Part shown: one piece after another, positions 1 through 57,502 of the stretch
How positions within the stretch are numbered: position 1 is the stretch's first letter
How the letters are laid out: each line of letters starts with the position of its first letter
From: Saccostrea cucullata
Taxonomy: Eukaryota
NCBI RefSeq assembly: GCF_032062105.1
Contig: NW_026936238.1
Location: forward strand, 1-64,000
Length of the DNA: 64,000 bases
Direction: 5' to 3'
Notes under the pieces: generated by a model
Seen by the model: only the letters and a program-made list of their open reading frames with translations
Database searches by the model: none
What the model was told of the DNA's origin: nothing
Position numbers and translations under genes: made by a program

Positions 1-876
1 CTGTATTAGTGTTGGGTGATGTTACCTGTATTAGTGTTGATGATGTTACCTGTATAAGTGTGATGATATTACCTGAATAAGTGTTGATGATGTTACCTGT
101 ATTAGTGTTGGGCGATGTTACCTGTATTAGTGTTGGGTGATGTTACCTGTATTAGTGTTGGATGATATTACCTGTATAAGTGTTGGATGGTATTACCTGT
201 ATTAGTGTTGGATGATGTTACCTGTATTAGTGTTGGGTGATGTTACCTGTATTAGTGTTGGGTGATGTTACCTGTATTAGTGTTGGGTGTTGTTACCTGT
301 ATTAGTGTTGGATGATATTACCTGTATTAGTGTTGATGATGTTACCTGTATAAGTGTTGATGATATTACCTGAATAAGTGTTGGATGATATTACCTGTAT
401 TAGTGTTAGGCGATGTTACCTGTATTAGTGTTGGATGATATTACATGTATTAGTGTTGGGTGTTGTTACCTGTATTAGTGTTGGGTGATATTACCTGTAT
501 TAGTGTTGATGTTATGAGTGTTGGAATACCTGTATTAGTGTTGGATGATGTTACCTGTATTAGTGTTGGATGATATTACCTGTATAAGTGTTGGGTGATG
601 TTACCTGTATTAGTGTTGGATGATAATACCTGTATTAGTGTTGGATGATATTACCTGTATAAGTGTTGGATGATATTACCTGTATAAGTGTTGGATGATG
701 TTACCTGTATTAGTGTTGGATGATATTATTGTTACCTTTATTAGTGTTGGATGATGTTACTTGTATTATTGTTGGATGATATTACCTGTATAAGTGTTGG
801 ATGATATTACCTGTATAAGTGATGGATGATATTACCTGTATAAGTGTTGGATGATATTACCTGTATTAGTGTTGGG
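1..876 (-). repeat. 25-bp minisatellite spanning an MDN1 splice donor (copy A)
   Basis: Plus-strand unit ttacctgtattagtgttggatgata, which on the minus strand is exon end CCAACACTAATACAG plus GTAATATCAT. About 35 copies; the array runs off the window start. Confidence 0.95.
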
Positions 877-2040
877 TGGTCTGGCCACTCCTGTTGAAGT
901 TCTCTTACTCTGACCATCAGTCTCTGTAGTATAGGAACACACTGAATGACCTCTGACAAGTTAGGGTCACGGTAAACATCATAACCCTGGTGATGATTTC
1001 TCAGCCTGATTATCATATACAGACTTATGTCCTCTTGTAGTGTCTGACTGGCCACCAGGTGGCTTCCTAATGTCTGCCTTTCTACTTCTGACACTGTCGA
1101 GAAGAGAAAAAATGAAATTACGAATGTATGTATGTATATGTTTGACTGTATCACTTATTGAGATGAAATCTGTTCTTACTTAGGTTATCAAGTGTCTTTA
1201 TTGTTTTTTTAACATAAGATTAAACTTACAGTTCCACTGCCCTCTAAACAAAGGTGCAGCAATGCTATAGCACAACAATGAGGGCTCTGTGATATCCTTG
1301 GTCATGACCTCTGTCACATGACTTTGTTGTAGCCAATCAGAGGAGGACAGACTTGAGAACAGTAGCTGGTGGGTGTGGCTTACAGCTGCCACTTCCCTGT
1401 CAGTCACTCTCTGGGATGCGTCATCTATTTCCGGTTCCAAAGGCTCAGATAAACCAGTGTCTTCCAGAGAGTAGGGTGTCATCAAGTCTTGGAAATCCTA
1501 TCAAAAGAAAAACACATAGCAAAAATTCAGTAGGATTGAATACACATTTTACATATTTTAAGATAACAAAATCTCAAACCTTTCACATTCTGTAGACACC
1601 TATTACAATATAGTTCTGTACAATGACACGCTGATCTACATGTTGAAAATCTTATTTTCTTTCATGATTTTTTTTTTTTTGTATTTTGAAGACAAATTTC
1701 AACCTCAGTCCAGGCCACCCTGACTAACCTGCTGAAAGGAGGGAAAGTTCTGTCTGAATTCCTCCTCCTCTATCACATCATTGTCTCTGTCATCGCCGTG
1801 GAGATTTGTCTTGTATTTATATAGACCCTCATCAGCCTCTTTCTGACGTCGTATCTCCTCCTGATGTTTCCATGACAACACAAAACGATTGAAGATTTGG
1901 TGCAGAGACATCAGAATCTCTCTATTTAATTCTTTTCTCATCATGGCTGAGTTCCGCAGTAAAAACAATGCACCAAGGTAAAGTCTGAAAGAGGAAGGGA
2001 TAGAACGTAACATATTAGAACCAGCATGATATAGTTTAAT

Positions 2041-2663
2041 TTATTATACTTTCATGTTAAATACTAAAATCTGATTGGTTTAGACGCAGGTAACAATCCG
2101 TTCGATTACCCTGAGCCTTAGCAACATACGTGACAACGGGTAACACAACGGTAATGCCACATGCGTGGAAATTATGCGCGTACGGTTCACCGTAGAATTC
2201 TCAAAACGTCAGTTGCGCGTTTGAAAGAACCGGAATTATCTTGACGTCAATAAAAGCTTGCTTGCGATAAAGCTTACTTTAAAACAACAAACGACAGACG
2301 ATACATGCTTTGCCAGTGTAGGAAACATGCTTGCGAGCCAGAAATAACGAACCTTATAACCTGATAAATGACTCGAATTCGAGTATCAAACAAACAATAA
2401 GGAGATTAGTGAACCGGTGAGTGTGAAAGCTTTCTATGCATGAGCGTAAAGACGATCGACGGTTTTTTTTCGCTGACGTCCTAAATCAATAAGACATTCA
2501 GTATAATAAAATAAATGGTGCCTGTTTTGTAGGGTAACATTTGAAATTGACACCCCTCGGAAAACCATTGTCAACCTCCGCTGACGCGTCGGTTGACAAT
2601 GGTTTTGCTTGGGGTGCCAATTTAATCTGTTACCCTCCAAAAAAGGCACCATTTATATAATAT
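2041..2663. mobile_element. Non-autonomous element with a terminal ~145-bp hairpin, possibly Crypton-like (copy A only)
   Basis: Palindrome at 2511-2655 (ataaatggtgcc...aaccattgtcaacc-loop-ggttgacaatggtt...ggcaccatttat); absent from the copy B intron 54810-54938. Confidence 0.55.
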
Positions 2664-4074
2664 TATAGTCCTCTCCTCAACCAATGAAAATTCAACACTT
2701 TTCTATAAAGGCAGAAAACAAATAACTACACATTTACCTTGAAGTTTGCTCTGTCCCGTTCTCCTCCACCTGACCCCTACAACCAGACACCAGTCTCTCT
2801 ACTAACAGGATTTTCTGAGCTAGCTTCCAACTGCTGAATACATCTGATGAAATGAACGGGAACTTTACCAACAGATGAGCTGCTTCCCTGATGTGACCAA
2901 CTGTCTCATGGACCTTGAGAGCAAAATATATATTTATAAATTTATATTTCTGAGAAATTCACAATAACTAGGTGAAAATTGAACCCAATTTTTAATTTGA
3001 AAATATGGATAATGTAATTCAAACTTATTCCATCATTAGAAGTGCTTCTACCTGACTGGTCACTTTCAGTCTGTCTGTCAATTGTTGTGCATTGTTTGCT
3101 TCTGTTGCACAGCCAGCTATAAGCCTCATCCCACATCTCACCTGAAACAAACAAGGTCTCATTATTTCTTTACACTTAAAATGCTGAAATGGCTTTTCAC
3201 ATGAGAACATGTCTAACTTGTAAATTCATTTGAAATTTAAAAGAAAGAGCAAACAGCCCCCATTGTGGACTCAGGGAGGGGGGGGGGCATAAAAAAACAA
3301 CCTGTAACTTTATAATCACTCACCTGTTGGAGGGCGACTATGAAGGGTGTGGTGATGTCTCTGTACAAAGGGAACTCCTCCTCCAGGGAACTGACCAATC
3401 GCTGGTGAGTTTTCTGCCAGGTCCTCTCTTCTGCAATCTCATTGGATAATTCTCCAGATTTACAAATTGTTAATAATTTTTCCATCAGCTGAATTGTGTG
3501 AGTGGCAGATCCTTTGGTACTGTCAAAGTCCCTTATCATATTCAAAAGTTGTTTGTACTGCAAGAGAGCAATGAATTTCAAAGTCAAGAAAGACAACTGA
3601 CAGAGAAACTGATAAAATTTACACACATATTGCCCAAAATGTTTTGAACAATTCTATTGTCATTAACATATAGCCATCACATTAATCCTGAAATATCAAG
3701 CCACTAACCTGACAAGCACTTGGTCTGTAGGCCTGCCGGGACTGTAAAGCCTCTATCTGTCTCTGTAACTTCTCCCTCCTGTCAATCAAGTGGAGGATCA
3801 GAGGATGTTGTAGGTGGGAGGGCGTGTCCAGCAGATGTAGACCTGTCATTTGTCTGTGATGAATGACCTTGACCTCAATATCTGTATTGATCTCCTCCAG
3901 CTGATATAAAAATTATTTAACTATTAATTTATTTTTTATTTATTTTTGATTTATATAAATTTACTTGAAAATTATTTTCAGTTTATTCAATTTTGCAACA
4001 GGAAAAAAAAATCAAGAGCAAAAACATTTTTACATTAATTTCTTAATGTAAACATTTTCTGTAATTGATCTTAC

Positions 4075-4468
4075 CTCCCTTTGCTTTAGCTGTAGTTTGA
4101 TCTGTGTTTTGACCACGGGATCAACAGGTGACCTTGGTTTGTGGAGGAGCATGCCCAGTAGACCTACATACACCCACTGTCTCCCTACTGTACTCATATC
4201 AGCCTCATCATCAGAAACGGCAAGTATTCCACTCAAACACTCCCTGACTATAAATAGATCAGGACCCATAACTCCATGCAGGAGGTCTGTTATGGTTTGG
4301 ATTATTTGTTCACTGTCCCTATGAGAGGTATCTTTGTTTTGGAGGCAGGTGATGAACTCAGACACACTCTGTTTGTATTTATCTTCTGATTCCTTGGTTT
4401 TAAACATTGCCACAGTGGAGTGAAGTATTGATACAAACAGTTGGACATTGTGCTGTCTCAACAATTTC
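4075..4468 (-). CDS. MDN1: MDN1 copy A linker exon
   Basis: 11 differences in 131 aa versus the copy B exon 57068-57461 (hand count). Confidence 0.8.
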
Positions 4469-5156
4469 CTAAAAGGACAACACAATGACTTTGTATATTA
4501 TTAATATTTGTCATACAAATTATTTAATTTATTGACTTTCAATAAATTCCTGAAGCTTGTGAATACACACAACACATAATTAAAACTTACCTAGTTTTGA
4601 GATTCCCTTTACACAACATTTAACCTTGAGACCAGATGTGCTGTGACAGGATCTGTAATTTGTGAAGCCTTGATTTTAAGTCTCTCAGGGAAACATGAAT
4701 AGTGAGATGTCTGTCCTGTGATGGCTTTAGTGTTTCCTCAGATTCTCCACACATCAGGTGGTAGGCAGTCTGACTTAGTACTGACTTATGAAGACTTTCT
4801 GGACTCTAAAACATATTTAATTTGATGACATTAATCAATTTTTTTTGACATGTAGCCAGCAATTAAACAGTATTACTTCATATGAATTGAACAAGAGCAC
4901 ACAAGCAATAATATATTAAATTATGATTCCTTTGTTACTGAGAATTGTGCTGTGCCAAGTACTTAGTCAAATGTCTGTGGATATAGTCCTTTTAGTTTTT
5001 TCCTGTTCTTAATTCTCATCACATTTGGTTTAAACATTAGACAACAACAAGAGAACATATAAATACATTTAATATTATTTAGATTTTTTTGTCATAATTA
5101 TATCCTACAAACGGAGCCGGAAGAGATATGGTAATGCAATCATGCGTGTGTTTTTC

Positions 5157-5548
5157 AAAAATTTTTCACTCATATAAAGTCACCACCACTTGTTGGTGGA
5201 GAGATGCAAATTTTCTCCTTTACTCAGGTCATAGCTGCAGAACTGTAGCTCTGTGCTTGAGAAAATTCAGACAGGTAAAGCAGGGAGCTACAGATCCATG
5301 TGTTGTAAAAACTTCTGATTTACACTGATTTTTTTCTTCCTCACTTCAGGTAGAGCATGCAAGCAGAGAACTTCAGTTCTGCAGCTATTAGGGGCCATTG
5401 AGCAGTGAGGGTTACATGGAAACTCGGTTTATATGGTCTAATCCAAAGGACCAGTCTCCACGTTCTACAGTGGGATTCAAATCAACGACATAAGGATCAA
5501 CTCCTTACTTCACCATTCTAGAGCAGATGCTCTAACCACTGCATCACT
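5157..5548 (-). mobile_element. Degenerate tRNA-derived SINE interrupted by a ~160-bp MITE (5231-5388)
   Basis: Minus-strand A-box-like GCAGTGGTTAGAGC and B-box-like GATTTGAATCC; MITE TIRs atagctgcagaactg / cagttctgcagctat. Confidence 0.55.
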
Positions 5549-5990
5549 GTTTTCAATGGAAGCAACTTAATGCTGTTTCTTACTAAAGTGCAGGAATTCC
5601 TTAGAGTACATCAGCACAATCAAGGTCAATATTTTATTGATAAACCAATTCTTTAAATGTTTAAATTATAAACATTTTTAAAGAGCCAGTATTGTTTAAC
5701 ATCTTTGCTCTTTTGTTTTTTTTAAATTACAATTACTGTGTGCTAGTATGGCCCATTTATTCTCTTATTATTCAATTTCTGCAACGATGCCAAGACTGCA
5801 TGGAGATTTAAATGTTTTTGTCACTGGGCTCACCTCAGCTATTTGTGGTTTCATTGCCACAATGTGTCTTTGTTTATAACAGGAGGTAAATTACATTCTA
5901 CCTGGATACATATCTTACATTACAAATGGCTGATACTTATCACGACTTGAAGTATTGTGAAAGAGATTTAACTACCAGATCACATAAAAG

Positions 5991-6097
5991 GTAATACTTT
6001 TAAATTAGTAAGTGTTGAACATGTTGAAGCTATACACACTCATACCACTACCTAGAGTGTCTCCATTACCTACACTCTGATAATGACTATTTTTTAG
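5991..6097 (+). other. Probable 5'-UTR intron of the intact TRIM-like gene
   Basis: AAG|GTAATA donor and TTTTTTAG acceptor 17 nt before the ATG. The paralog has the same arrangement (CAG|GTAATA at 61281, acceptor AG at 61372-61373). Confidence 0.6.
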
Positions 6098-6114
6098 AGT
6101 TTGAAACAACAACA

Positions 6115-7743
6115 ATGGACCAGGTACCAGATACAGCCCAGCACTTTATTGAGTGTGACACGGGATTATGTAGGAACTTTTCTGTGTTTTACTGCAACAC
6201 CTGTCATCAGCGAATATGTGATGAATGCAAACAGCGCCATCTAGAGCAGAACAGTGGACATGACATTGTCCTCTATCACAAGAGAAAGAGAAAACTCCCG
6301 TCAGAGAAATGCAGGATCCATCCCACACAACATTTAAACGTTTACTGTAAAATTTGCCAGGATCCTCTTTGTTCTACATGTTTTACCGAACATCACAGTG
6401 ATCATGATAAAAGTGACCTTGAAACCATTTACAATGACAATCTGCAGCAATGTCAGAAAGGAATAACTGAGATTTGGAAAGAAGTCATTCCTACAGCTAA
6501 AAATAATGTTGAATCAATTGGGAAAAAGAGAGAAAATGTCAAGCAAGAAATTGCCAAGTTTAGAGTTTCCATGAAAAATAGAGCAGATGAACTGAAAGAG
6601 GTTGTTGACAATATACTAACTGATAATAATAAAAAACTGGATGAGATTGAAAACTCTGTTCTGACTGAAATGATGGAACAACAGAAGGAAACAGAGGACT
6701 ACATAAAGTACCTAGAAAAAATGATTGCAGACTATGAGAGTAGAATGTCATCAATTAAACACACCGAACTCATGAAATTCCAATTAGACATTTCTTTAGC
6801 TACCCTGAAGATGCCCAGCAAATCTGAACCCAAACTGCCAATTTTAACATCAGGTACACTAAATAAAGAAGAGATAACCAAACAGTTTGGTAAAATAGAA
6901 CTAGATTTATCAGAAAGGTTTGAACTCTCATCTGTTACAAAAGTAAGTGAAAAAACTATCCAGGGAAAAGTGTATCATTTGTCTCTCTTACCCCCAAACA
7001 AATTCTGGGCCAGTGATCTTATGAATATCATTCAGTATGACATGGAAGAAAACATCTTACATAAAATATATATCACTTTTTTAAATTTCCGAGGTAACCA
7101 CACAGTAACAACAGAGGGAGAACTGCTTTACACAGATTACAATAAAAACTCTGTATACAGAGTAAATAGTGACAAGTCCATCATCAGGTTTATTGAGACA
7201 GGTAGCTGGGAACCTGGAGCCATTTTCTCCTCTCCTATCAATGGACACATACTGGTTGTGATGGAGAGAAATCTAGTCTATAAAATAACCAGATACAGCA
7301 GAGGAGGAAGAAAGTTACAGGACATACGGCGGGATGATAAAGGACAAAATATCTACCAAAGTATAGATTACATCACCGAGAACATTAATGGTGATATCTG
7401 CACATCTGACTCTAATGCCAATAAGGTTGTGGTGGTGACAGCCTCAGGAGAGTACCGCTTCTCTTACTCTGGTCACCAGTCTCATCATGGATTCCGTCCT
7501 TATGGAATCTGTACAGATGTCCTGGGAAACATTCTTGTGTGTAATGGCTATCCTATGTCTAATGACACTTTTAGTGTCCACCTGCTGGACATCAATGGTC
7601 AGTTCCTGTCCCTCTTACTCGCACCAGATCAATGTCCTCCACGTCCCTGTGCTCTCTGTGTTGATGATCAACACAATCTGTGGGTCGGGGGAAGAAGTTC
7701 TACTGTCTCTGTGTACAAGTATTTACAGAAAACAGAAAAATGA
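6115..7743 (+). CDS. RING-less TRIM-like protein (two B-box zinc fingers, coiled coil, NHL-type beta-propeller), 542 aa, nested antisense in an MDN1 copy A intron
   Basis: Intact single-exon ORF. Motifs: CNTCHQRICDECKQRH..H and CRIH..CKICQDPLCSTCFTEHHSDH (B-boxes); heptad-rich middle; NHL-like repeats ENINGDICTSD, PYGICTDVLGNILVC, PCALCVDDQHNLWVG. AATAAA at 7796-7801. Confidence 0.9.
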   Translation: MDQVPDTAQHFIECDTGLCRNFSVFYCNTCHQRICDECKQRHLEQNSGHDIVLYHKRKRKLPSEKCRIHPTQHLNVYCKICQDPLCSTCFTEHHSDHDKSDLETIYNDNLQQCQKGITEIWKEVIPTAKNNVESIGKKRENVKQEIAKFRVSMKNRADELKEVVDNILTDNNKKLDEIENSVLTEMMEQQKETEDYIKYLEKMIADYESRMSSIKHTELMKFQLDISLATLKMPSKSEPKLPILTSGTLNKEEITKQFGKIELDLSERFELSSVTKVSEKTIQGKVYHLSLLPPNKFWASDLMNIIQYDMEENILHKIYITFLNFRGNHTVTTEGELLYTDYNKNSVYRVNSDKSIIRFIETGSWEPGAIFSSPINGHILVVMERNLVYKITRYSRGGRKLQDIRRDDKGQNIYQSIDYITENINGDICTSDSNANKVVVVTASGEYRFSYSGHQSHHGFRPYGICTDVLGNILVCNGYPMSNDTFSVHLLDINGQFLSLLLAPDQCPPRPCALCVDDQHNLWVGGRSSTVSVYKYLQKTEK

Positions 7744-10700
7744 TATCTTATTTACTGTATTATGTTTATGCTAATTAGTGTTAATTTAATGGAGAAATAA
7801 ACAAAGGTTCACTGGAAAATGAATTTAGTTGAAAACATGTTCAAATCCCAGATTTAATCCATTGATAATTTTTAATAGCAGTCTTGTTGTTGATTGCTTA
7901 TATTTATATTTGAGACAAATACTACACAAATAACAAGCCAGATAACTATGTTGTGACACACAAGGAAGTTCACCTATATCTCCACAGCATTTGATCTTTA
8001 TCAATAATCTTTGCAATATGAAATTACAGAATTTGTAATATTAATATTATCAAATATTATTATGTATCATAGTGTTTTTCCCCAAACAACCATAATATTT
8101 TAAATTGTACAATACACATGTAAAATTTTTTTGTTCTCTTCACTGTTATAAAATTGGCCAGTTTGTTTTGATTTGCTTAGAATACTAATTGTCAATGAGC
8201 ATTTGAACATTCAATGTTGCTCTACAGCTGTCAAATATTAAACAATGTCATGTACGTACATGTATTAAAAGTAGCTTATTACATGGATTTATCAAGGCTG
8301 TTTTTACTACCAGTAAACGGTACCTTTCCCCTCAAGAAAAAGGTGCAAAAATTCCCCTTTCTCAGATAGAAAATTTCCTAATTAAACGGAGAATATTTAA
8401 AACTTTGTTTTGAAATTTTCCGTTTTTGTCCAATTGAAGTTTAACAGCATATCCTAATTTACCATCCTAGTCATTTAAATGCTTTTAAAAGAAAGAATTA
8501 TATTATTCAAGCTTTTATTTGATATTGATTGGTAAACATGTGCCAAGTCCATGACGTCAAAAGATATGTAACTATGCGATTGCAGAGTTAAAAAGAAAAT
8601 GTAGATGAGTAGGATGGAGCTTATATCACTATGAATTGGAAGAATGGAGTAACAACAAAAACAATATCAGTAGTGAAACATGAAAAACAGAATTAATTTG
8701 TGATAGATATTCAGCAAAAAAAATGAAATAAAGTACTGACCTGGTTTAATTTTTTTTTTATTTTGTCTAAAAAGTGAAGTTTTTGTGGCTTTTGTGAAGG
8801 TCTACAAATGACCCTCAGAAGCTTTTTGAATGGAGAATTTTGCTCCATTTATTTAAAAATTTTCTTGGGGGGCTTGCCCCCGGATCCCCCTAGAATACTT
8901 GCGCCTCTGGCACTCAGATCGAGCCTGCGGCTTTCAATTTTCCCCTTTACATATTAAACGGTAGTAAAACAAAATAGCTAGATAAATCCCTAATTAATAG
9001 ACCAGGGTCAAAGCTATCAAGTTAATTTTAGTATCTAAGACTAAATCCAACCTTACCCAATTTTCTCTGGTCCTTTCAATACTTGATGTTGTGCTCTGAG
9101 GGGATGAGGACCAGTTTAACCACCAGTTTAGTCCTGTAGCGGAGGTGTTGGTCCACAGTTGTTGGTACAGATCACTGAGTATCTCACACAAAGTGTTACT
9201 GACAGCTTCCTGTAAATAAACGTTGTTAATTATGCATATCTTAATGATAAAATCTTGATTTTCCAATAGCAAGCTCTCTAAAGGAACTGTACGTGTACAT
9301 AAATTGGGGTAGCTTTTCAAAATTAAGCATAATCACTGGGTTTGGAATTGTTGGCATCAACATAAATTAGCGCTACATGTCCGTTCAGTGTATTGTATAT
9401 GGAAATGATTTGTTAGAGATACAGTGTATTCATAAATTAGCACATTGCTGTCTGCGCCAAAGCAACTAAAATATGAAGCCTGCTTTTTAAAGTACACTGT
9501 ATACACTATTACTTTACTTAGATCTTTCCTGTGTATTTAACATCAATTTACTCATCACATTGAAGTTGGCCTCAGTTCAATAATAAAACATTAAAATTAC
9601 TTGACTTTTGTCTTCACACTTTGCTTTCAGTTTTGCTAAAACTATCGGTGACACAGGAGTAAACTGACTCCCATAGTTAACTAATGCCCCTATCTCTGAT
9701 GAAGCAGTAAAAGTTGATGTCATCATTCCATTGACCAGCTTCAGCTCAGCGAGAACAAACATGTGATCTTTCAGAGGCCAAAGGTCAACATGATTTCCAG
9801 TCGTTGACTGGCTGCACAGTGACAGTTGATTGTTGTATTCTGGTTGGTCCATTTCCATTGCATTGTCCACTGCCTTTATTTCCTCTCGTGTTAGGTTATA
9901 TTGCTGAAGGAGTTGTCTAACCTTTCTAATGGTCTCAGCGTTATTGCCTGGAAGTTTTTAAATTTAAATATTGCAATAGGTAATGCAAACAAAAACAAAA
10001 TCATGAGGCTCAAATTAAAGGAGGATAGACATAACAGAAAGCAATGCCACTTCAGAAACTTAGCTAACAGTTATTAGAAAATCCCCATCTTATAAAAAAG
10101 AATTTATTTTTTTGGTTGAAGGCCTGCCTTATTCATACCATATGGAATTTCAGCTTTCACTTCAGTCCCTGCATTCATTACTAATGACACGATTTCACGC
10201 CTCCTCTCTAGATGTAACTGGACTTTATAGTTCATAATGAGGTCAGCAGCCTCTCTATGGATGTCAGACAGTTTACAGAGGTCACTTAGGGTCAAGCGGT
10301 CCTCAGCCTCACTCTGGATTCTGTAAGGGTGTGGGTGACCATGGGAGTTCCAGAACCTGATGTAACAATCCGTCTCCTCATATCCTGACAGCAGACCTTC
10401 ACCAGCCTGGTACAGATGTGGGAAACACTCCATAAACCTAAAGGGAGAAAAATTTGTTTTATGAATATCACATAATTTCTGTAGTTGTCCATCTTACTGT
10501 TGAAGAATACTAGTATAATCATAAGTTTTCAGTGGAAACGCCAAAATCAACAATTATCAAAGCACAGAGAAATATTTTAATAATTCTTTTTTTTGGTCAT
10601 TAAAAAAATTGATTTCAATGAATTTGACAAAAGTTATGGATTTCTTTTCAGTTTTGCCAATTTTTTTTTCAATGAATTGAACCAAGTACTGACATGCCAC

Positions 10701-40322: not shown

Positions 40323-40703
40323 GGTGGCTAACTTGGCTCTTCTGGCAACACATTTATAGTAGTAGTCTTGGCAACACTGACCTATTTCTGTAGCGCTGTT
40401 CTTACTAAAGGAAAAATTAAACTTTTACACAAAGCATAAAAACAAAAAAAATGTTTATGAAGATTCAATTCTTTATTTAGATAAAATGGGGATAAAAACA
40501 GCCCCACCTTGTGGTGAGTTGATCTGAGCACACAGAGACATCTAGTGGTGGGACAAGTAAAGGGAGATTACTCTCAGCGTCACAGAGAAGTCCTCTCCTG
40601 TAGGAAAGACCTGTACAACAGATGTTTATAGTAAATATATTTTAGCAATAAAAACCGTTTTTGTTAATTCATGCATTTCCAAATCTTTACACATGTACAT
40701 GTA

Positions 40704-40761
40704 TTACATAGTTGTGCTAATTCATTACCTAGTTGTGCTATTATTTACCTAGCTGTGCTAT
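40704..40761 (-). repeat. Short ~21-bp three-copy repeat spanning the donor of exon 40749-40845
   Basis: ttacatagttgtgcta / ttacctagttgtgcta / ttacctagctgtgcta. Confidence 0.75.
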
Positions 40762-44694: not shown

Positions 44695-45123
44695 TACAGG
44701 TTGGGACCAATCGCCCAAATGGGATATAATAGTCCGTTTGGGATATAATATCCCATATGGGCTATAAATTTACAGTGCAAAAATTGAAAATTTTTATTTT
44801 GGCAATAAATATCATAAATCCGCATTTAAACACATAAAAAGGAATAACTTTTGGTAAGCAAGTTTTTCTGCAACCCTATAGTTTGTAAGATTGATCCCCA
44901 AGAAGTTAAGGAACTTCCGAGGGATCAATCTCCAAAACAATGGACATACAGGAAAACTTGTCAACCAAAAGTTATTCCTTTTTAAGTGTCCTGATGCGGA
45001 TTTATGATATTTATAGCCAAAATAAATATTTTCAATTTTTGCACTGTAAATTTATAGCCCATATGGGATATTATATCCCTAACGGACTATCATATCCCAT
45101 TTGGGTGATTGGTCCCAACCTGT
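44695..45123. mobile_element. Foldback MITE
   Basis: Near-complete inverted repeat caggttgggaccaatcgcccaaatggg ... cccatttgggtgattggtcccaacctg. Confidence 0.8.
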
Positions 45124-47244
45124 TATACATGTAACCCAAACAAGTATCCTGTGTACATCTTGCAAAGTGTTTATATAATTTTTCCCCTCAACATACAGTT
45201 CAACATTTCACTAATCTACACTACAACAAAAGTAATGCACATATACTTCACACCTAAAATTCTTCTGCATAAAACAGGGATATTCATGAATTATTGCATC
45301 ATGCAATTTTTGTGCCCAAGTTGCTAAAATATGAAGCCTGCATTTTTATGTACATATACAGTAGTTGTATCTGTCATGTATAATAGCAGAAATAATTACA
45401 TATTTACCATAGGGACTTGAGCCAGTCTTAGCAAAATTGGGTGTACACTAACATAATAGGAGAAGTAAGACTGTCTCAAGTCAATGTGATATTTAATATT
45501 ATATGGACTTTTGTGAGGACCACTAACTTTTACACTCGACGGCTTACTTTTAAACTAGGACTTATCCGACAATGTACGCAATCTGTTTTGAAATGAAAAT
45601 ATTTAGGTCAACATTTATTATTGAACAAAAATCACCGGCAGAAATTATAGCACATATATAGAATCGGACAACCACTCTACCCTCAAATACTGCCATTCAC
45701 ATGTTAGTGCCCCAAACATTATCTATAACCACTAGAAATGCATTTCAAAAAAATTCATGTACATGTATTCTAAGAATAAACATGAAAAATCAATTAATGC
45801 TCCTCAGATGTATACAAATATGAATATTTTTTGAACAGGTATTCCTGTTTTTGTGGACACATGATGTCAAGATAAAAGAGAATATAGAACATTTTATATC
45901 TGCTAAATGGAGACTTGAGAAGAGGTACATTATGGAACTACATGTATAGGGATGGAGCTGCAGCCCTCTCATGTGGTGTCCTAACATATGGATCATCCGC
46001 TATCATTAAGGTACAATGACAATGTTACACCTGTATGTTTATATTATTTATACTTCTCAATTTAAGTGAAAAAATAATTTCTGCTTTCCCAACCAACTCC
46101 AGTTTATAGCCAACCCTTTTAAAAAATCCTTTTAATATCATCAAAAATATGAATATTTATTTTTTCATAATACATGTATTACCATGCATATCAATTTCCA
46201 AAATTAGAAAACACTATTTTGACATTGGTTTCTTATTTCTTGCAGTGAGCCAGAACATCATATCAGCAATGAGGGGGTAGACCATTTGAACCAATATTTT
46301 GTTCCATAAAAACAGGCAGACAAAACTACAGGTTTGAAAATAAATGGAATGAAAATCACTGGACATAATATCAATCCCTATCCTTGTACTACTGAAACTG
46401 TGGCATTGTCCACCAACTCCATGTGGAACTTTGGATGAAAGATTTGAATGAAAAACTATTTGTGCATTATTCCAAAGGAATTATGGATTCTATTTCAGAA
46501 TTAAGACTTTTTCAGTTGAAGTTTGATATGAAAAGAGACATTTATCCTCTGTCTATTTGAATGTCAATGGCATCAATTACGTCTTTGAATGTTGAAGTTT
46601 TCCACATACTTTATGTGCAAAATACATTATATAATTTAAATACATGTATTTAAAAAAAAAATAATAATGATTTTATAAAAGGAGAAAAAGACATTTAAAA
46701 TAAATAGTTTGAAAAAACTCGTCAAATCATTTTTAAATATTTTTTTCAGTAAAGAATTGTTGAATTCACACTTTTCAAAAGTTATGTCCTTTGACCGCTA
46801 TCTTTGAGGAAAACCCCAAAGAATCTTCACAGTACCCTTTATAGTTTCTGGTTTGTAACTTTGTCATCTGAATGGAAAAAATTATGTGCATCTTGGATAA
46901 TGATTGCCCTAAGATGGGCCAACTCATATATCAAAAGAAAAAATAAAAACACAGTTGATTTATCTGAGACTGAGCATGCCCAAAATATTTTGTAGCATAA
47001 AGAGGAGAAATGTCATTTCTTTCCCCATTTGACTTTTTGGTTGACCCAGAAAAGGGACATAACTATTGTAAAGTTTGGATTGGATTATAGTCCTTATATC
47101 TCTATTTAGAAAAATTGTCAAAAAATTCATTTAGATATAAGCTCCTCAAAACATACATGTATTGATGGTCATTTCCCAACATTTACTGCTTTGGATTCAT
47201 TTATAGTGACATGATAATGAAACAGCTGCAACTTGCAAACATAG

Positions 47245-49006
47245 GTAATCAGAGATTACAGAGCTCACCTCAACGTGTGTTGTCTTTAAGTAAGGCAAAT
47301 TAATTAAGTCACACAATTAACCAACAAAAGTGTACATCCAAAAATGCAAAATTTTTGCACGTTTGATACTTTGGAATAAACTTATATAAAAATTTAAAAC
47401 TAGTTCTTCACCATGAAAATGTAATTAAAATCCAGCATCTGAAGCAAGATTGAGAATTTTCATCCCTTGATGCATCATTTGTGCAACTGGTTTAGTTTCT
47501 TGGTGATAGACTTGCACCCATAACTTTTACGAGGTCTATTATCTGGAAAATGTATGTCGAATTCAGCATCTGAAGCAAGTCCATTAGTGTGCATCCTAAG
47601 ATGAATCATTCATGCAAGTTTGGTCAACATAGGGCTTAAAGTTACTTGCAAATGAAACCTGTATAAAAAAATTAACCTTTCCACTAATCCAGAAAATGTA
47701 GGTCAGATTCAGTATCCGAAGCCAGCCTAGTAGATTGCAACCTTAGATGTACCATCCATGCAAGTTTGGTCATTATAGGGCTCAAAGTTACTTGGAAATG
47801 AATCCTGCACTATAAACCTTAACATGTTTACTCGTCCATAAAATGTAGGTCAGATTCAGCATCCGAAGCAAGGCTGGTAGTATTCATCCTAAGATGTACC
47901 ATCCATGCAAGTTTGGTCATTATAGGGCTCAAAGTATCTTCGATATGAAACCTTCACCAAAAACTTTAACCTGTTCACTCAACCGAAAAATGTAGGTCGG
48001 ATTCAGCATCCGAAACAAGGCTGGTAGTATGCATCCTAAGATGTATCATCAATACAAGTTTGGTCATTATAGGGCTCATAGTAACTTGGAAATGAAAGCT
48101 GCACCAAAAACTTTAACCTGTTCACTCAACCGGAAAATGTAGGTCAGATTCAGCATCCGAGGCAAGTCTAGTAGAATACATCCTAAGATGTACCATCCAT
48201 GCAAGTTTGGTCATTATAGGGCTCAAAGTATCTTCGATATGAAACCTTTACCAAAAACTTTAACCTGTTCACTCAATCGGAAAATGTAGGTCAGATTCAG
48301 CATCCGAAGCAAGGCTGGTAGTGTGCATCCTAAGCCGAATCATCCATGTAAGTTTGGTCAACATAGGGCTTATAGTTACTCGGAAATGAGACCTACACCA
48401 AAAACTTCACCAAAAATGTTAACCTGGACCAAAAACATTAACCTGTTCACTCAACCGGAAAATGTAGGTCAGATTCAGCATCCGAAGCAAGTCTAGTAGA
48501 ATACATCCTAAGATGTACCATCCATTCAAGTTTGGTCATTATAGGGCTCAAAGTATCTTCGATAAGAAACCTTTACCAAAAACTTTAACCTGTTCACTCA
48601 ACCGGAAAATGTAGGTCAGATTCAGCATCCGAAGCAAGGCTGGTAGTATTCATCCTCAGCTGAATCATCCATGTAAGTTTGGTCAACATAGAGCTTATAG
48701 TTACTCGGAAATGAGACCTACACCAAAAACTGCACCAAAAATGTTAACCTGGACCAAAAACATTAACCTGGTCATTCCTTTGCTGAAATTGCAGCATCTG
48801 AAACTTTGACTGGTACAATGAAACACAATAGCAACATCTTCCATGCATGTCTAATCAATATAGGACATAGAAGTACTTAAAAAGAAAACTGCTCCAAAAA
48901 ACTTAACCTTAACCCGGGAAGCCGACGCCGACGCCGACACCGACGCCGACGCCGACGCCGAGGGTATCACATAAGCTCCCCCCAACTTCGTTGAGGTGAG
49001 CTAAAA
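47245..49006 (+). mobile_element. Helentron-associated (HINE/Pearl-like) element with internal satellite
   Basis: ~150-bp tandem units at 47400-48780, (GACGCC)n tract, 3' hairpin agctcccccaacttcgttgaggtgagct followed by an A-run; subterminal motif agagctcacc at the 5' end. Confidence 0.7.
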
Positions 49007-51363
49007 AACATCATGTCACAATATAAAAAAAAACAATTAAGGCAAGATTTGCTAGCAATACATGTAGGTCAAATTGTAGATATAATTTATTTAAAACAAA
49101 ATACTAATATTCTATCATTTGTTTAGCATAACAATTATTGACTGTTTTCGAGTGACATTGATTATGCTAGCCTCCGTGGAATGAAAATATTGTCCTTTGC
49201 TCCACGTTGGACAATATTTCAACCCTTGGAGGCTAAAATAAAGTTGCCCTCAACAGTCAACATCATTCTGTATTTGTTTTAGTTCGTAATTATTTTAGTG
49301 ACACTCTATCAAAGGACTTGTTTTGGTAATTTATTTTTCCAGCTTTATAAGGATGATAATATAAATATTTTTTAAAAATATTATTGTTTTTACTCTTCAC
49401 CATATTATACACGTAGTAAAATACATTGTAGTGTATTGTGGTGGTGTGTCACTTTTTCCCCAGCTTCAACAGAGTGTCCATGATGTGCGGTGGTTTCATA
49501 TTCATAATATCAGTTATAGACCCTTTTCCTTTGACATTATTTGCCTACGAGTTATTCTCCTTAGCCGCCATCTTGTAGGGCAAAGTAGTTAATTTACCTC
49601 TTTGAGCAACCAATTTTAAACATGCATGTAAGAAATATATATTGGGGAAAATATGTACAATTTTAAAATTATGAATAAATAGAGGCTTTAACAAATATAG
49701 TTTCATAAGAAAAATAGTGTTATCTTTACCTCAGTAACCAGTATAACAAATTGAACTTGGTTGAATAATGAAGGGATCTGGGAATGTTGCCCTAACTGGC
49801 CTAAGATATGTCAGTTTTAAAAGGGGAATAACTCCTACGCAAAATATGTCATAGGAAAGGGGTCTATTGACTCATAAATCATCTTTATATGGTACTGGAC
49901 ATAAAAATCTTCAAAACAAAACGCAGATTTATTATTAATCATAGTTGTACGTGGAGATACAACCTTTAATCTTATTATAAATAAAGAGTATTCAGAGCAT
50001 GAGGCAGTGCCAATGTACACTACATGCATGCCGTGATTTCTGTCCTCGCCCGATCCCTTTATTTCATCAATTTCACTCAGGCGTTAGAAACAATAGAACT
50101 TATAATTCTTTTTTGTTTTTTTAAATAATAATTATTCACGGACAATTGAAGATACCTCCTGTAATCAGCTAATTTGATTTAGCATCGTCAATTTTGCAAT
50201 CGGCAATCCTCGGCTGACTCCGCTTTGCTCCGTTATGTGCGAGGTACGAGTCATCCGAGGAAATCCGAGTGTCAATTTTGAGTTTGAGTTGCAGACTGGA
50301 AATAACTTGTACACTGTAATGTGCAAAACTAAATCGTGAAATCGGAAGATATCCGGATTGCTCAACAAAGCTCTGACGAAAAGCGCATTATCCACCGTGT
50401 TACGAAAGAAATATAGCAACGAGGAAATTTTTTAGTGTTAATAGATTAAGTTAAGTGAATAAAAAACTAAAAGCAAGCATTTTAAAAATGCAAGCTTATT
50501 TTTTATCACATTTCATAACAATTTCGAGCAGAGGAAATTCGGGTCTAGGAAATTCGAAGGATATTACTCTAAAACTGTACACTAACTTTATAATTTTTTA
50601 TTAGCAATTTGTAAAAAATATTAATCCCTATAAATATTGCATAAGCAATTAAACTTTTAATTATTCCTTAATTGCTTAAAATTACATTGTACATATATAT
50701 TAACCCATTTCCCCAATAAATTGATATTATGTAAATAAGTCAAAATAATTTGTCATTTTATATTTTTTCCTTGTACTTTTTTCTTTTAGAAATAAAATTC
50801 CATTCCTGGTGATAACAATATTTTATAAAATAATTATTTTCTGATGTTTTTATGGGAATTCTGAATTTTTAAAAATTGCTTATAAAAATATCATTTTTTC
50901 CCTACAGAGTTACCCCCCTTACTTTGGCGTGTTCTATTTTTAGATTTACGCACTAGAACCTTTTCTGATGTATTTTATCAAATTATAGAAAAGTTCTCCT
51001 TTCAATCCGTGTATGTGTTTCAGAGTTTTAATTACTCTGAAATTAGGACCCGAAAGTCCCATACTCCCTTAACTATCTTTTCAATGTTTAGAAAACCATT
51101 AATTCTGAATAACTACTCCCATCCCAATGCCCATACACCAACACTTAAACTTATATGTATAGAGCAGCCCGGTCCTCCGGGCTGCAATAACAGAGGGACA
51201 GTGTCAAAACTGTATAACACAACAATCTGTGTCACCTGTATAACAGAGGGACAGTGTCAAAAGAGAATGATGGAATGTGCGTTTGCCAAAACAAGTATCA
51301 AAGTGATGAAATTGTGCATTTCCTTCTGAAGTTTAAACATGATAAACACTGATGATGTTAAAT

Positions 51364-53479
51364 GTTACCTGTATAAAGTTTGGAAGATGTTACCTGTATA
51401 AGTTTAGTTTAAGAAGTATTTTATTCATAATATACAAAGAGTACAATATTAATATGGATTGACTTCACTTACCTGTATAAGTGTTGGATGATATTACCTG
51501 TATTAGTGTCGGATGATATTACCTGTATTAGTGTCGGATGATATTACCTGTATTAGTGTCGGATGATATTACCTGTATTAGTGTTGAATGATGTTACTTG
51601 TATTAGTGTTGGATGACGTTACCTGTATTAGTGTTGGATGATATTACCTGTATTAGTGTTGGATGATATTACCTGTATAAGTGTTGGATGATATTACCTG
51701 TGTAAGAGTTGGATGATATTACCTGTATTAGTGTTGGATGATATTACCTGTATAAGTGTTGGATGATATTACCTGTATAAGTGTTGGATGATATTACCTG
51801 TATTAGTGTTGGATGATATTACCTGTATAAGTGTTGGATGATATCACTTGTATTAGTGTTGGATGATATTACCTGTATAAGTGTTGGATGATATTACCTG
51901 TATTAGTGTTGGATGATATTACCTGTATTAGTGTTGGATGATATTACCTGTATTAGTGTTGGATGATATTACCTGTATTAGTGTCAGATGATATTACCTG
52001 TATACGAGGGCTGTTCAATAAATAATGTCCTGAACTATATGACATACATTACAGATATTGTATAACATTAAACTTGACCTTCTCTCATTATTGAATCTTT
52101 CGTGAATTTATAACAGCTAATGTGACCACTTTTCATCATATAGTTTCATCTTGAGAAGCTGTGAAACAAGGGCTTTTCGAGACACTGCATTATAAATGAA
52201 TGTTAAAGAATCAGTAAACAAGAGTGAAAATAAAAGCTTCATTAAAGCTGCCGTAAAACATGTAAAAAAATCCCAAAGAAATATTAACTGAAATATGTGA
52301 CATTTAGAGCAACCAATGCCTGTTTTATAGACAAAAAAGCAGTTGGATTTCAATGATAAAACATTATATAATGGGCATCAAAAATGGGTACCCTCCTTGC
52401 CAACAAAAATTATAACAACTCATGTACTGTTCGCCAAATTTCAACAAACGATATTTGATGCTGTATGATTGACTTTAAGACACATAGCAAATTTGATAGA
52501 CATCACATCAGGGGTATTTTACACTGTATTTAAGAAACGTTTGGCGGTAAAAAAGCTTGATACTCAAAGGTCACCCTATATTTTGAAAAATGAGTGAAAA
52601 TGACAGCGTGTACAAAAATCTTTACAATTATTTTAAAATATCAGTAATTGTAGTTATCCACGTTTGTTTTATTTTCAAACAGATATTGGAACATTAATCT
52701 ATCGCTTAAAACCCTAAAAACAAAATTTACCATAAGATGTACTTGATGAAAACCGCGAATGTCTGAAAAGTGCACAGGTATGCAAGAGCACAAAGACAGA
52801 TGTATATGTAATTTTCTTAAACATTTGTGGTAATGTTGTTCAAAATCGTATTCGGAGAGACAGTTTAATTTCTGGAGGAGTCAAGAAAGCACTTCTTTGG
52901 CCAAAAAATCAAAAGGTTTATTAGAGGAAGGACCCAGAATCAGGAATTCACTACATTGAATTTCTTCAAGACAGCGTCCAAACCCGCATGCCCTGAAGAG
53001 TAAATGGGTTCTCGGGATAAACAGAAAGTTAATGTTTTTTCACATTAACAATTTTTGCAAGATCTTTGACCTCTTGACTTGTTTCAATTTCCAGACTTGG
53101 AAAAAATACCTTTTAGAAGGAAGAAACAAGTCCGGAAAATCATTGGATCTGCCATTTCCCAGTATACTGAGGGACATACCTAAATATGAGTTCTACAAAC
53201 GATCAGAAATTGGATAGAAAATGCTACGGACATGTATTTTACTTAAAAGAGATTAAATAATAAAATCATGAAGAATAAATAATTGAAAATCGTCTTTTAA
53301 TTCTTTCTGAGCACTGAGGACATTATTTATTGAACAGCCCTCGTAAGTGTTGGATGATGTTACCTGTATAAGTGATGGATGGTGTTACCTGTATAAGTGT
53401 TGGATGATGTTACCTGTGTTAGTGTTGGATGATATTACCTGTACAAGTGTTGGCTGATATTACCTGTATTAATGTTGGG
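51364..53479 (-). repeat. Same 25-bp donor-spanning minisatellite in copy B, split by a mariner element
   Basis: Units at ~51364-52004 and 53344-53479, abutting exon 53464-53699. Confidence 0.93.
52005..53343 (+). mobile_element. Mariner (Tc1/mariner) element, ~1.34 kb, decayed transposase
   Basis: 27-bp perfect TIRs CGAGGGCTGTTCAATAAATAATGTCCT and TA duplication (52003-52004, 53344-53345). The remnant LTLRHIANLIDITSGVFYTVFKKRLAVKKLDTQRSPYILKNE*K*QRV resembles the mariner HTH/WVPHEL region. Confidence 0.85.
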
Positions 53480-53741
53480 TGGTCCGGCCACTCCTGTTGA
53501 AGTTCTCTCACTCTGACCATCAGTCTCTGTAGTATAGGGACACATTGAATGACCTCTGACAAGTAAGAGTCACAGTAAACATCATAACCCTGAGGTGATG
53601 ATTTCTCAGCCTGATTATCATATACAGGAGTTATCTCTTCTTGTAGTGTCTGACTGGCCACCAGGTGGCTTCCTAATGTCTGCCTTTCTACTTCTGACAC
53701 TGTAGAGGAGAGAAAAAATGAAATTACGAAAAAAGTATGTA

Positions 53742-53889
53742 CAGTGGACCCTCATTTATCCGGACGCTTTGGTTCCCAGTCAATTTGTCCGGATATGTGA
53801 AGCATCCGGATATCTGAATCACCAGATAAACAAACAAATAAACATTTAAGAATTTTGTTTCGATGAAAAATCGTCCGGATACTGAAGCA

Positions 53890-53921
<32 letters not shown>

Positions 53922-53927
53922 TCACTG
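53742..53927. mobile_element. Tc1/mariner-type MITE (copy B only)
   Basis: ta|cagtggaccctca ... tgagggttcactg|ta; absent from the copy A intron at ~1120-1150. Confidence 0.8.
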
Positions 53928-55574
53928 TAATTGTATGTATCAATTATTGAGATGGAATCTGTTCTTACTTAGGTTATCAAGTGTCTCTATTGTTTTTTTA
54001 ACATACGATTAAACTTACAGTTCCACTGCCCTCTCAACAAAGGTGCAGCAATGCTATAGCACAACAATGAGGGCTCTGTGATATCCTTGGTCGTGACCTC
54101 TGTCACATTACTTTGCTTTAACCAATCAGAGGAGGACAGACTTGAGAACAGTAGCTGGTGGGTGTGGCTTACAGCTGTCAATTCTCTGTCAGTCACTGTA
54201 TTGGGTGTGTCTTCTATTTCAGGTTCCATTGGCTCAGATAAACCAGTGTCTTCCAGAGAGGTGGGTGTTATCAAGTCTTGGAATTCCTATCAAAAAAGAA
54301 TAATAATATTATTATGTATGTGTAAACACTTCTGCTTCACACTGAAGACATTTCTAGATAACATTTTTGAATCATATCCTTATTAACTTCTCTCAATTAG
54401 AGCAAACCCATTTCTATATCAAATAATAACTGTTACAATAGTCTCTTGGATTTCAAATGTAAAAAAAATCATAATCTGATTTTCCTTTCACCTTTGCCAA
54501 CAGCTTACAATCATTTTATGACTCTACACTTGTATAATGCCACCCTGACCTACCTGTTGAAAGGAAGGAAAGTTCTGTCTGAATTCCTCCTCCTCTATCA
54601 CTTCATTGTCTCTGTCATCGCCGTGGAGTTTTGCCTTGTATTTATACAGATCCTCCTCAGCCTCTTTCTGACGTCGGATCTCCTCCTGATGTTTCCATGA
54701 CAACATAAAACGATTGAAGATATGGTGCAGAGACAACAGGATCTCTCTGTTCAATTCTTTTCTCATCAAGGCAGAGTTCCGCAGTAAAAACAAGGCACCA
54801 AGGTACAACCTGAAGGAGGAAGGGATAGAACAATGTCATGTAAGAAGGCAGCATAATATAGTTTTATATAATTCTCTTCTCAACCGATGAAACAACATTT
54901 TTCTATTAAGCAGGAAACAAATAACAGAATATTTGTACCTTGAAGTTTGGTTTGTCTCATTCTCTTCCACTTGACCCCCACAACCTGAAACCAATCTCTC
55001 CACTAACAGTATTTTCTGAGCTAACTTTAAGCTGTTGATTACATCTGATGAGATAAATGGGAACTTTCCTAGAAGCTGGGCTGCCTCCCTGATGTGACCA
55101 ACTGTCTCATGGACCTTGAGAACAAAATTCACAATTTATTTTATAATTCTCAGAAAATTCATAATAACTGCAAGTGAAAATTAAATGAAACAAATTTTTT
55201 ATTTAAAAACTTATGGATATTGTAATTCAAACTTATTTCATCATCAGAAGTACTCCTACCTGACTGGTCACTTTCAGTCTTTCTGTCAGTTGTTGTGCAT
55301 TGTTTGCTTCTGTGGTACAGCCAGCTATAAGCCTCATCCCACATCTCACCTAAAACAAACAAGGTCTCATGTATCCTTTACAGTTATATTGCTTTTAAAG
55401 GCTTTTTAACATGATCACTTGTCTAACTTCTAGACTGAATCTCTTATGTCTTTCAAAATATTCAGTATTCCTTCAAAATTTTAAAGGATGGGCAAGCCTT
55501 GCAGAAGGCAGTCCAAGTTTTGTGGATGAGAAGGGACTTATTTTAAGAACACCTGTTTACAATGAATTAAAGCA

Positions 55575-56536
55575 CAGGAGTCTGAAGTTTTAATTGTCAA
55601 AAAAAAAAAAAAAGAAAAATTCGGAAAAAAATTTCCCTACCCTTAACTAAAAAAACCTCAGGATGGCAACGTGTTTTGGGGAGACCCACCTAAACAAATA
55701 GATCTGGGCTTGGTCGGAAAAATCTCGCAACTAATTTAGTATCCGGAGTGTTTGTGCTATTTATTCAAGTTAAGAAATCAAATCTGCTTGACGACTATGG
55801 GCTGTTCATGGCCTGTTTTTAAGTTTGACAGCTCATCCTGGACTCCATGCCACTAAACCGGAAGTGAACTCCGAGGTGAATATATGACGTAATTGAAGAA
55901 AAGAACCAAAAAAATGCATGTAAAACTTTATGTACAATTTTATGTCACCATACGTGATCAATAAAAAGATGTATTTTTCAAACAAAATAATGCTTTATAA
56001 GAGCGCTTAGTCTAAATATTTGGCTCTTTGTCGACATGGCTTTTCAGTGATTTAAATTTGGAGCTTGTAAAAACTGAACTATCTGTCCCTGGTACACATC
56101 GTCGTACACGTAAGAAAAAGGAATAAATAACTTTTTAAAGTTCTCTTAAATATATTTAAAATAACTGAATAAAATTACGTTGAACAATTATTTTTTTGAT
56201 TTCATTTGAACAAGTTTTCATAAACGTAAAATATACACTGCGAGATTCTCTTCCGGTTTAGTGGGCAGGCATGGAGTCCAGGATGAGCTGTCAAGTGGAA
56301 CAGGGGCTAGGAACGGCCCGTAGTTGTCAAACAGATTGAATTTTTCACATTAACTGAATAACAAAAACGCTCCGGAAACTGAATTAGTTGCGAGATTTTT
56401 CTGGCCAAGCCCAGATCTATTTGTTTAGATGGGTCACCCCTAAAACATGTTGCCATCCTGTTTTTTTTTTTTAGTTAAGGGTAGGAAAAAAAATTTCCGG
56501 ATTTTTTTTTTTTTGACGATAAAAACCTGTTCCTGG
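55575..56536. mobile_element. Foldback element with ~280-bp inverted arms (copy B only)
   Basis: 55588-55865 is the imperfect reverse complement of 56250-56525; absent from the paralogous copy A intron. Confidence 0.8.
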
Positions 56537-57067
56537 CACCAGGTATAAATATTTAATTCACTCACCTGTTGTAGGGCCACAATGAAGGGTGTGGTGATGT
56601 CTCTGTACAGAGGGAACTCCTCCTCTAATCCTGAGATATACAGCCACTCACCTGACAGGTGCTAGGTCTGTACCTATAGTCATCCTACTAATCCTGAAGA
56701 TACAATACTACTCACCTGACAGGTGCTTGGTCTGTAGGCATGCTGGGACTGTAAAGCCTCTATCTGTCTCTGTAACTTCTCCCTCCTGTAGATCAAGTGG
56801 AGGATCAAAGGATGTTGTAGGTGGGAGGGCGTGTCCAGCAGATGTAGACCCGTCATTTGTCTGTGATGGATGGTCTTGACTTCAATATCTGTATTGATCT
56901 CCTCCAGCTGACCAAAAAATTAATTAAACGATTATTTTATTTTGAAATAATCTTTATCTAATTTTGAACATGAAATTATTCATCAATAGCAGAAAGTAAA
57001 TTCCAGAATTTTTAAAAACATAAATTTCTATGTTTTTCATGTGAACGTATTCAGTACTTTTTCTTAC

Positions 57068-57461: not shown

Positions 57462-57502
57462 CTTAAAGGACAACAAATGAAATTGTATATTTTTATCATT
57501 AA

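What the first reader, a model, noticed from the sequence alone, without database searches (positions are those of the whole stretch)
1..56740. Repeated amplification of exon-intron junctions into splice-site minisatellites across one gene
Seen: the tandem arrays I found outside transposons are built from MDN1 splice junctions. Donors: 861 and 53464 (25 bp, same junction in both copies), 23061 (68 bp), 27265 (42 bp), 40302 (61 bp), 40749 (~21 bp), 56716 (~63 bp). Acceptors: 28144 (43 bp) and 43293. The units are unrelated in sequence and length, so these are at least 8 independent origins. The real exon is always the terminal copy, and the array grows only into the intron. Stages range from 2-3 copies to ~37. 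Inference: either duplication is mechanistically focused on splice junctions (e.g. transcription or spliceosome pausing, R-loops, break repair at exon edges), or these are the only exon-overlapping duplications selection tolerates. Tolerance alone does not explain why purely intronic non-TE arrays are scarce here. I cannot confirm novelty without a literature search.
Basis: partly seen in the sequence, partly recalled or inferred. Interest (0 to 1): 0.9.

Follow-up and report, generated by a model that had tools for sequence, protein, structure and literature searches.

The report
Oyster midasin exon-edge minisatellites ("mirages")
In an oyster-like genome, seven exon edges of the ribosome-assembly gene midasin have been copied head-to-tail into the neighbouring intron; this is a known, apparently harmless repeat type (amphioxus "mirages", human F7), but here it is far commoner than chance and also occurs at the stop codon, which hints at a duplication bias near coding sequence rather than at splice sites as such.

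Summary
The arrays are real. Of 57 donors and 57 acceptors mapped in two partial MDN1 copies, 7 donors (6 origins) and 1 acceptor carry a local tandem copy, against 0.3-0.8% of non-TE intron positions. The 27-bp array at 43293 stops 3 nt short of the AG. Other contigs hold the same units at 1 to about 150 copies, so they are VNTRs, not assembly errors. RNA-seq of related animals uses the exon-proximal copy at the three arrays tested. Genome-wide, periodic triples of the donor 8-mer exceed the reversed control about 3-fold (period 23-53) and 7-fold (54-83); an acceptor test was inconclusive. The structure is already described as amphioxus "mirages" and human F7 intron 7, and this scan noted it in several other windows of this genome. 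New here: seven origins in one gene, presence/absence of a 37-copy array, and an array built from the last codons plus stop codon, with no splice site. Best reading: duplications start preferentially in coding sequence, only edge-crossing ones survive, then copy number drifts. The source bias is inferred, not shown.

The parts
14771..58095 (-). MDN1 (midasin) copy 1, linker to C-terminus, about 43 exons in the window; continues to ~69300 on the contig; stop codon at 14771-14773
   Evidence: a relative's transcript-derived protein covering these exons matches PDB midasin at E 1e-30; junctions 22420-28144 confirmed by RNA-seq
861..11924 (-). MDN1 copy 2, partial tandem duplicate (16 linker exons), runs off the contig start inside its 25-bp array
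1..875 (-). 25-bp donor array of copy 2 (15 nt exon + 10 nt intron), at least 34.6 copies; real donor after 861
51469..53478 (-). 25-bp donor array of copy 1 (5.4 + 21.4 copies; decayed remnants to ~51370); real donor after 53464; ~82 copies on C10684, ~150 on C7186
52004..53343 (.). 1.34-kb element with perfect terminal inverted repeats and TA flanks (Tc1/mariner-like, by own knowledge) inserted into the 25-bp array
56626..56736 (-). 63-bp donor duplicate (2 copies) followed by a ~250-bp deletion that removes the next acceptor and exon start relative to copy 2
43296..43378 (-). 27-bp x3 polypyrimidine-tract array ending 3 nt before the acceptor AG (exon starts 43293); does not span the junction; abuts the end of a high-copy repeat
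51185..51265 (-). Detached degenerate copies of the 27-bp unit, one including the acceptor and ~12 nt of exon
40703..40768 (-). 21-bp donor array, 3 degenerate copies; real donor after 40749
38088..40322 (-). 61-bp donor array (20 nt exon + 41 nt intron), 37 copies; real donor after 40302; single copy on C7186 and C11147
28132..29702 (-). 43-bp acceptor array (29 nt intron + 14 nt exon), 36.6 copies; real acceptor before 28144
26429..27294 (-). 42-bp donor array (30 nt exon + 12 nt intron), ~16 copies in two blocks; real donor after 27265; 2.7 copies on C10684
22503..23118 (-). 68-bp donor array (58 nt exon + 10 nt intron), ~9 copies; real donor after 23061; 8 copies on C10684, over 16 on C7280
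14636..14826 (-). Stop-codon array: last ~17 codons + stop + start of the 3' UTR, followed by two degenerate ~66-bp copies; 24 copies in a paralog on C19334. No splice site in the unit
   Evidence: local alignment score 61-65 versus a maximum of 37 in 2000 shuffles
30039..34560 (.). ~4.4-kb element with mirror-image subterminal arrays (42/50-bp and 79-bp units); TE-borne, excluded
6060..7740 (+). Nested single-exon B-box/TRIM-like ORF in an MDN1 intron (second copy 61390-62844); name from sequence appearance only

Best explanation
These are neutral exon-edge minisatellites ('mirages') made in three steps. (1) Seeding, inferred: 20-70-bp tandem duplications arise more often in or from coding-exon DNA (45% GC, CpG-depleted and so probably methylated) than in AT-rich intron DNA, by slippage or break repair with little microhomology. 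(2) Filtering, partly shown: copies wholly inside the coding exon are mostly purged; copies that cross the coding edge leave the intact exon attached to one terminal unit, and the spliceosome keeps using that exon-proximal site (first donor, last acceptor), so the mRNA is unchanged. Extra downstream donors appear better tolerated than extra upstream acceptors. (3) Turnover, shown: once there are two copies, unequal exchange or slippage moves copy number between 1 and ~150, and arrays are later split by transposons or cut by deletions.
For: 6/56 donors with a local copy versus 0.3-0.8% of intron positions. Genome-wide donor-motif triples 899 versus 328 and 957 versus 151 for the reversed control, while single occurrences are 64,666 versus 72,784. 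RNA-seq joints use the terminal copy: 23060 (36 reads), 27265 (57 reads), acceptor 28144 (29 reads continuing into the exon ending at 34624). Copy number differs between contigs; the 61-bp array is single-copy in two 93-97% identical copies. An array of the same build spans the stop codon with no splice site, and a 51-bp x4 in-frame duplication lies inside a paralogous TRIM-like ORF. Exon CpG o/e 0.18-0.23. Silent downstream pseudo-donors were shown experimentally in F7 (PMC1557585).
Against: The seeding bias was not measured; only surviving arrays are seen. The splice-free evidence is one stop-codon array (old, ~75% identical to the CDS end) and one in-frame array. Donors outnumber acceptors 6:1 (Fisher p = 0.06), and array-bearing donors match the consensus slightly better (7.9 versus 6.9 of 9, one-sided p = 0.02, small n, some comparison donors imprecisely placed); both could point to a U1-linked cause. 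The acceptor motif test showed no clear excess (1280 versus 1133, no single-site baseline, TE arrays dominate). RNA came from other individuals that may lack some arrays. Both window copies may be defective.
Confidence: 0.55

Rival explanations
1. Duplication is focused on splice donors by the splicing process itself (U1 binding, polymerase pausing or R-loops just after the 5' splice site causing breaks or template switches).
For: Donor excess over acceptors (6/56 versus 1/57); strong genome-wide donor signal; slightly stronger donors carry arrays.
Against: Stop-codon array has no splice site; unequal tolerance can explain the donor excess; no R-loop or pausing data.
Confidence: 0.22
2. Uniform duplication rate; the pattern comes from tolerance plus unequal survival or detection (AT-rich intronic arrays decay, are deleted or are masked as TE; an exon-tethered unit is protected), and this window was picked because it is extreme.
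For: The window rate (5/56 donors with 3 or more copies) looks roughly 10-20 times my rough genome-wide estimate; TE masking was by eye.
Against: Intron target is 4-5 times larger than junction target yet has almost no non-TE arrays (7 of 8-13 origins at junctions, p = 4e-5 to 3e-3); the genome-wide motif test uses no masking and still shows 3-7-fold excess; young near-perfect arrays would be detected at any GC content.
Confidence: 0.13
3. Arrays are kept by selection as functional elements: extra U1 sites that protect long introns from premature cleavage, recursive-splicing points, or a tunable switch to unproductive isoforms.
For: Most copies keep the GT; the 25-bp array is shared by four or five MDN1 copies; several arrays lie in long TE-laden introns.
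Against: The 61-bp array is absent from two other copies including the AAA-ring-bearing one; copy number varies up to ~5-fold; no clear use of distal sites in poly(A) RNA; arrays also occur in 100-250-nt introns.
Confidence: 0.08
4. Assembly artefact from noisy long reads.
For: The contig shows 1-2-nt indels against RNA reads.
Against: The same units occur at the same junctions on independent contigs with different copy numbers; units carry shared variants; one array is split by a transposon.
Confidence: 0.02

Closest known systems
Amphioxus 'mirages' (Adh3, globins BflGb6/BflGb9, TnC, PGBD5; PMC3087553, PMC3902484)
   Same: Minisatellite-like tandem copies of an exon-intron boundary, at donors or acceptors, unit 10-160 bp, length differs between haplotypes, normal splicing, mechanism unclear.
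   Different: Here in a mollusc, with seven origins in one gene, up to ~150 copies, a measured genome-wide excess at donor motifs, and a stop-codon counterpart. Somatic instability not tested.
Human F7 intron 7 37-bp VNTR (PMC1557585)
   Same: First unit spans the exon-intron boundary; identical downstream pseudo-donors stay silent.
   Different: A single locus in human; pseudo-donors there were shown to work when the first is mutated, which was not testable here. No acceptor or stop-codon cases.
Helentron-borne satellite-like arrays of oysters (PMC7492417, title and abstract only)
   Same: Tandem arrays scattered through oyster introns; the 146-162-bp arrays of this window look like this class.
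   Different: Junction units are found only at their own locus and its paralogs and derive from host exon sequence.
Intron gain by tandem duplication of an AG|GT proto-splice site (PMC3265369, abstract only)
   Same: Tandem duplication containing a splice signal.
   Different: No new intron is formed here; an existing intron is lengthened and exon boundaries are unchanged.

Membership tests
Mirage minisatellites | Tandem unit spans an exon-intron boundary | tested here: met
   Seven arrays; the 27-bp array at 43296 does not meet it locally
Mirage minisatellites | Unit length about 10-160 bp, unrelated between loci | tested here: met
   21-68 bp versus 10-72 and 150-160 bp (PMC3087553)
Mirage minisatellites | Both donor and acceptor boundaries can be duplicated | tested here: met
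   6 donor origins, 1 acceptor
Mirage minisatellites | Length variation between haplotypes or copies | tested here: met
   alleles and paralogs cannot be fully told apart in this assembly
Mirage minisatellites | Normal splicing is unaffected | tested here: met
   for the 68-, 42- and 43-bp arrays; RNA from other individuals, so indirect; other arrays untested
Mirage minisatellites | Concerted evolution within the cluster | tested here: inconclusive
   Units are 0-3 changes from consensus with more decay at the far end of the 43-bp array; no tree built
Mirage minisatellites | Somatic length instability | not testable with these tools
   needs tissue-level long reads or small-pool PCR
F7 IVS7-type pseudo-donor VNTR | Downstream pseudo-donors become active when the first donor is mutated | not testable with these tools
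   needs a minigene
TE-borne satellite arrays (Helentron) | Unit dispersed at many loci inside element ends | tested here: not met
   61-bp and 25-bp units match only MDN1 loci (the tool warns that counts are lower bounds)
Intron gain by tandem duplication | A new intron is spliced between duplicated AG|GT sites | tested here: not met
   No such joint among those listed (9 weaker joints were not shown)

The most novel reading that the evidence does not exclude
Oyster germlines have a strong, so far unquantified mutational bias that seeds 20-80-bp tandem duplications at coding-exon edges, concentrated in methylated housekeeping genes, producing on the order of a thousand mirage VNTRs genome-wide. 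That would make mirages a genome-scale process whose cause (coding chromatin versus splicing machinery) can be tested directly.
Probability: 0.45. Interest if true: 0.6.

Novelty: new member of a known kind. Interest (0 to 1): 0.38.

Why it matters
The structure is known, but its origin is called unclear in the amphioxus papers and I found no genome-wide count in the held literature. A genome with hundreds to about a thousand such arrays, young and polymorphic, allows a test of whether mutation is biased at exon edges and how spliceosomes ignore up to 150 perfect decoy sites. In practice these arrays mislead gene prediction and read mapping, and are a source of locus-specific VNTR markers for oysters.

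Tried and rejected
No full-length midasin reference could be fetched (one search gave fragments), so exons were placed by hand and snapped to AG/GT; a few boundaries outside 22350-28300 may be off. The acceptor motif test was uninformative. The joint 22420-22600 (4 reads plus one contig) was rejected as evidence for distal donor use: the exon part of the unit is identical, and the C10684 allele resembles the unit upstream of it. The AT-rich 79- and 42/50-bp arrays were considered as counter-examples and set aside as TE subterminal arrays. A recursive-splicing reading of the AG|GT in each unit was set aside: no pyrimidine tract precedes it in most units and poly(A) RNA cannot show it. The original Adh3 mirage paper is not held, so it is cited through PMC3087553. 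Literature searches for a genome-wide survey found none.
Full report
Setting. The window is the first 64 kb of a 70.3-kb contig in a 1.17-Gb, 23,869-contig assembly. That it is an oyster is inferred from its Helentron-like satellites and from earlier scan notes; I did not test it. The minus strand carries two partial copies of midasin: copy 1 from beyond 64000 to a stop at 14771, copy 2 from 11924 to the contig start, each with a nested TRIM-like ORF on the plus strand. A relative's transcript-derived protein covering these exons matches solved midasin structures at E 1e-30. I placed 58 exons by hand.

Observation. A test independent of TRF, asking whether the 18-mer centred on a site recurs within 150 nt, was positive for 7 of 57 donors (6 origins, since 861 and 53464 are one junction) and 1 of 57 acceptors, against 0.34% (one side) or 0.8% (either side) of 24.5 kb of non-TE intron; binomial p = 4e-8 to 6e-6 for donors, not significant for acceptors. 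TE masks were drawn by eye. The two AT-rich intronic arrays are subterminal parts of one element.

Not an artefact, and variable. The 68-bp array has ~9, 8 and over 16 copies in the window, C10684 and C7280; the 42-bp array ~16 versus 2.7. The 25-bp array spans about 2.1 kb on C10684 and 3.75 kb on C7186, about 82 and 150 copies. The 61-bp unit, 37 copies here, is matched once only on C7186 (97%) and C11147 (93%), with the match ending at the end of the first unit. So that array is young or lost in those copies, and is dispensable. Raw long reads were not available.

Splicing. Three oligo-dT RNA-seq runs and one contig set, mostly 95-99% identical, were laid on 22350-28300. Joints use the exon-proximal copy: 23060 in 36 reads, 27265 in 57 reads, and 29 reads leave 28144 into the exon that ends at 34624. 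Depth over most of the 42-bp array is zero. Four reads and one contig placed at the last 68-bp unit are ambiguous by sequence. The RNA is from other animals, which may lack some arrays, and reads may come from a paralog.

Genome-wide. The donor 8-mer AG|GTRAGT occurs singly 64,666 times against 72,784 for the same word reversed. As three copies at period 23-53 it occurs 899 versus 328 times, at period 54-83 957 versus 151 times: about 3- and 7-fold after correction. These count copies, not arrays, and the two ranges overlap in part. By distinct arrays in contigs up to C2965 the short-period figures are 15 versus 5, with unrelated units. The control understates the effect because many control arrays hold a splice-like word too. 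I could not confirm that the genome-wide hits sit at real exons. A rough extrapolation (23 arrays in 12% of contigs, 14% of window donors having this 8-mer) gives about 1,300 donor arrays, or about 0.5% of donors if the assembly has some 300,000 introns (my assumption). The window, at 9%, would then be a hot gene. The acceptor test was inconclusive.

Mechanism. Shown: arrays exist, vary in length, and are spliced out with the terminal site used. Established: identical downstream donors stay silent in human F7 (PMC1557585). That first donors and last acceptors both win fits exon definition (own knowledge). Inferred: why seeds are at exon edges. Two observations favour coding sequence over the splice site as the trigger: the 3' UTR begins with decayed copies of the last ~17 codons and stop codon, expanded to 24 copies in a paralog (score 61-65 versus at most 37 in shuffles), and a perfect in-frame 51-bp x4 duplication lies inside a paralogous ORF. 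Exons are 45% GC with CpG o/e 0.18-0.23, short introns 28% GC, consistent with gene-body methylation. Against: donors outnumber acceptors 6:1 and array donors are slightly stronger, both weak statistically. I put coding-biased seeding plus tolerance at 0.55, splicing-linked seeding at 0.22, tolerance and survival alone at 0.13, selected function at 0.08.

Comparison with what is known. Tandem repeats spanning exon-intron boundaries, at donors and acceptors, with 10-160-bp units, haplotype length variation and normal splicing, are described in amphioxus as mirages, with the mechanism stated as unclear (PMC3087553; PMC3902484). The arrays here meet every defining feature I could test. The name came to me through earlier scan notes and I checked it in the papers. 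The scan has reported the same pattern in several other windows of this genome, including a stop-codon case; these are unchecked notes, not independent support.

Verdict. Real, more than chance, a new member of a known kind. The added value is density in one gene, direct presence/absence evidence, a genome-wide excess and a splice-free counterpart. Interest 0.38; about 0.6 if a genome-scale exon-edge mutation bias is confirmed.

Noticed in passing
window 861-58095; contigs C10684, C7280, C19334, C8223, C7186, C11377, C17835, C15604: The 3' half of MDN1, normally single-copy, is segmentally duplicated many times together with a nested B-box/TRIM-like ORF: 11 hits for one linker exon, 5 for the VWA exon, 2 for a mid exon; AAA-lid hits only on C7186.
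   Followed up: partly
window 56566-56715: Copy 1 lacks an acceptor and ~180 nt of one exon relative to copy 2, so this copy is either broken or must skip there.
   Followed up: partly
P0004 / L019: A transcript-derived midasin fragment of a relative joins the exon ending at window 56716 directly, in frame, to the exon starting at 43293, skipping about six exons: the same region that is damaged in copy 1.
   Followed up: no
window 14636-14826; C19334:44400-45989: 66-bp array derived from the last codons and stop codon of MDN1; 2 decayed copies here, 24 in a paralog.
   Followed up: yes
C19334:29990-30193 (L006/L007 boundary): Perfect 51-bp x4 in-frame duplication inside a TRIM-like ORF.
   Followed up: partly
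C19334:49893-50915 (L008/L009) and C8223:3373-4398 (L011): 117-bp array with largely open frames on both strands and an AG|GT donor-like word; origin not found.
   Followed up: no
window 30039-34560: ~4.4-kb element with mirror-image AT-rich subterminal arrays (foldback-like); its 50-bp unit recurs on C733 and C1797.
   Followed up: partly
window 52004-53343; C19334:9109-10074: Mariner-like TIR element with perfect 29-nt arms inserted in the 25-bp array; a 72% identical relative lies in an MDN1 paralog intron.
   Followed up: partly
window 44696-45123: 212-nt-arm palindrome (88%) in the 10-kb intron, probably a MITE.
   Followed up: no
one search list: Of 10 arrays sampled with the reversed control word and independent of it, 7 carry a donor- or acceptor-like word by eye (chance about 0.33), so the control is itself contaminated by junction arrays.
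   Followed up: partly
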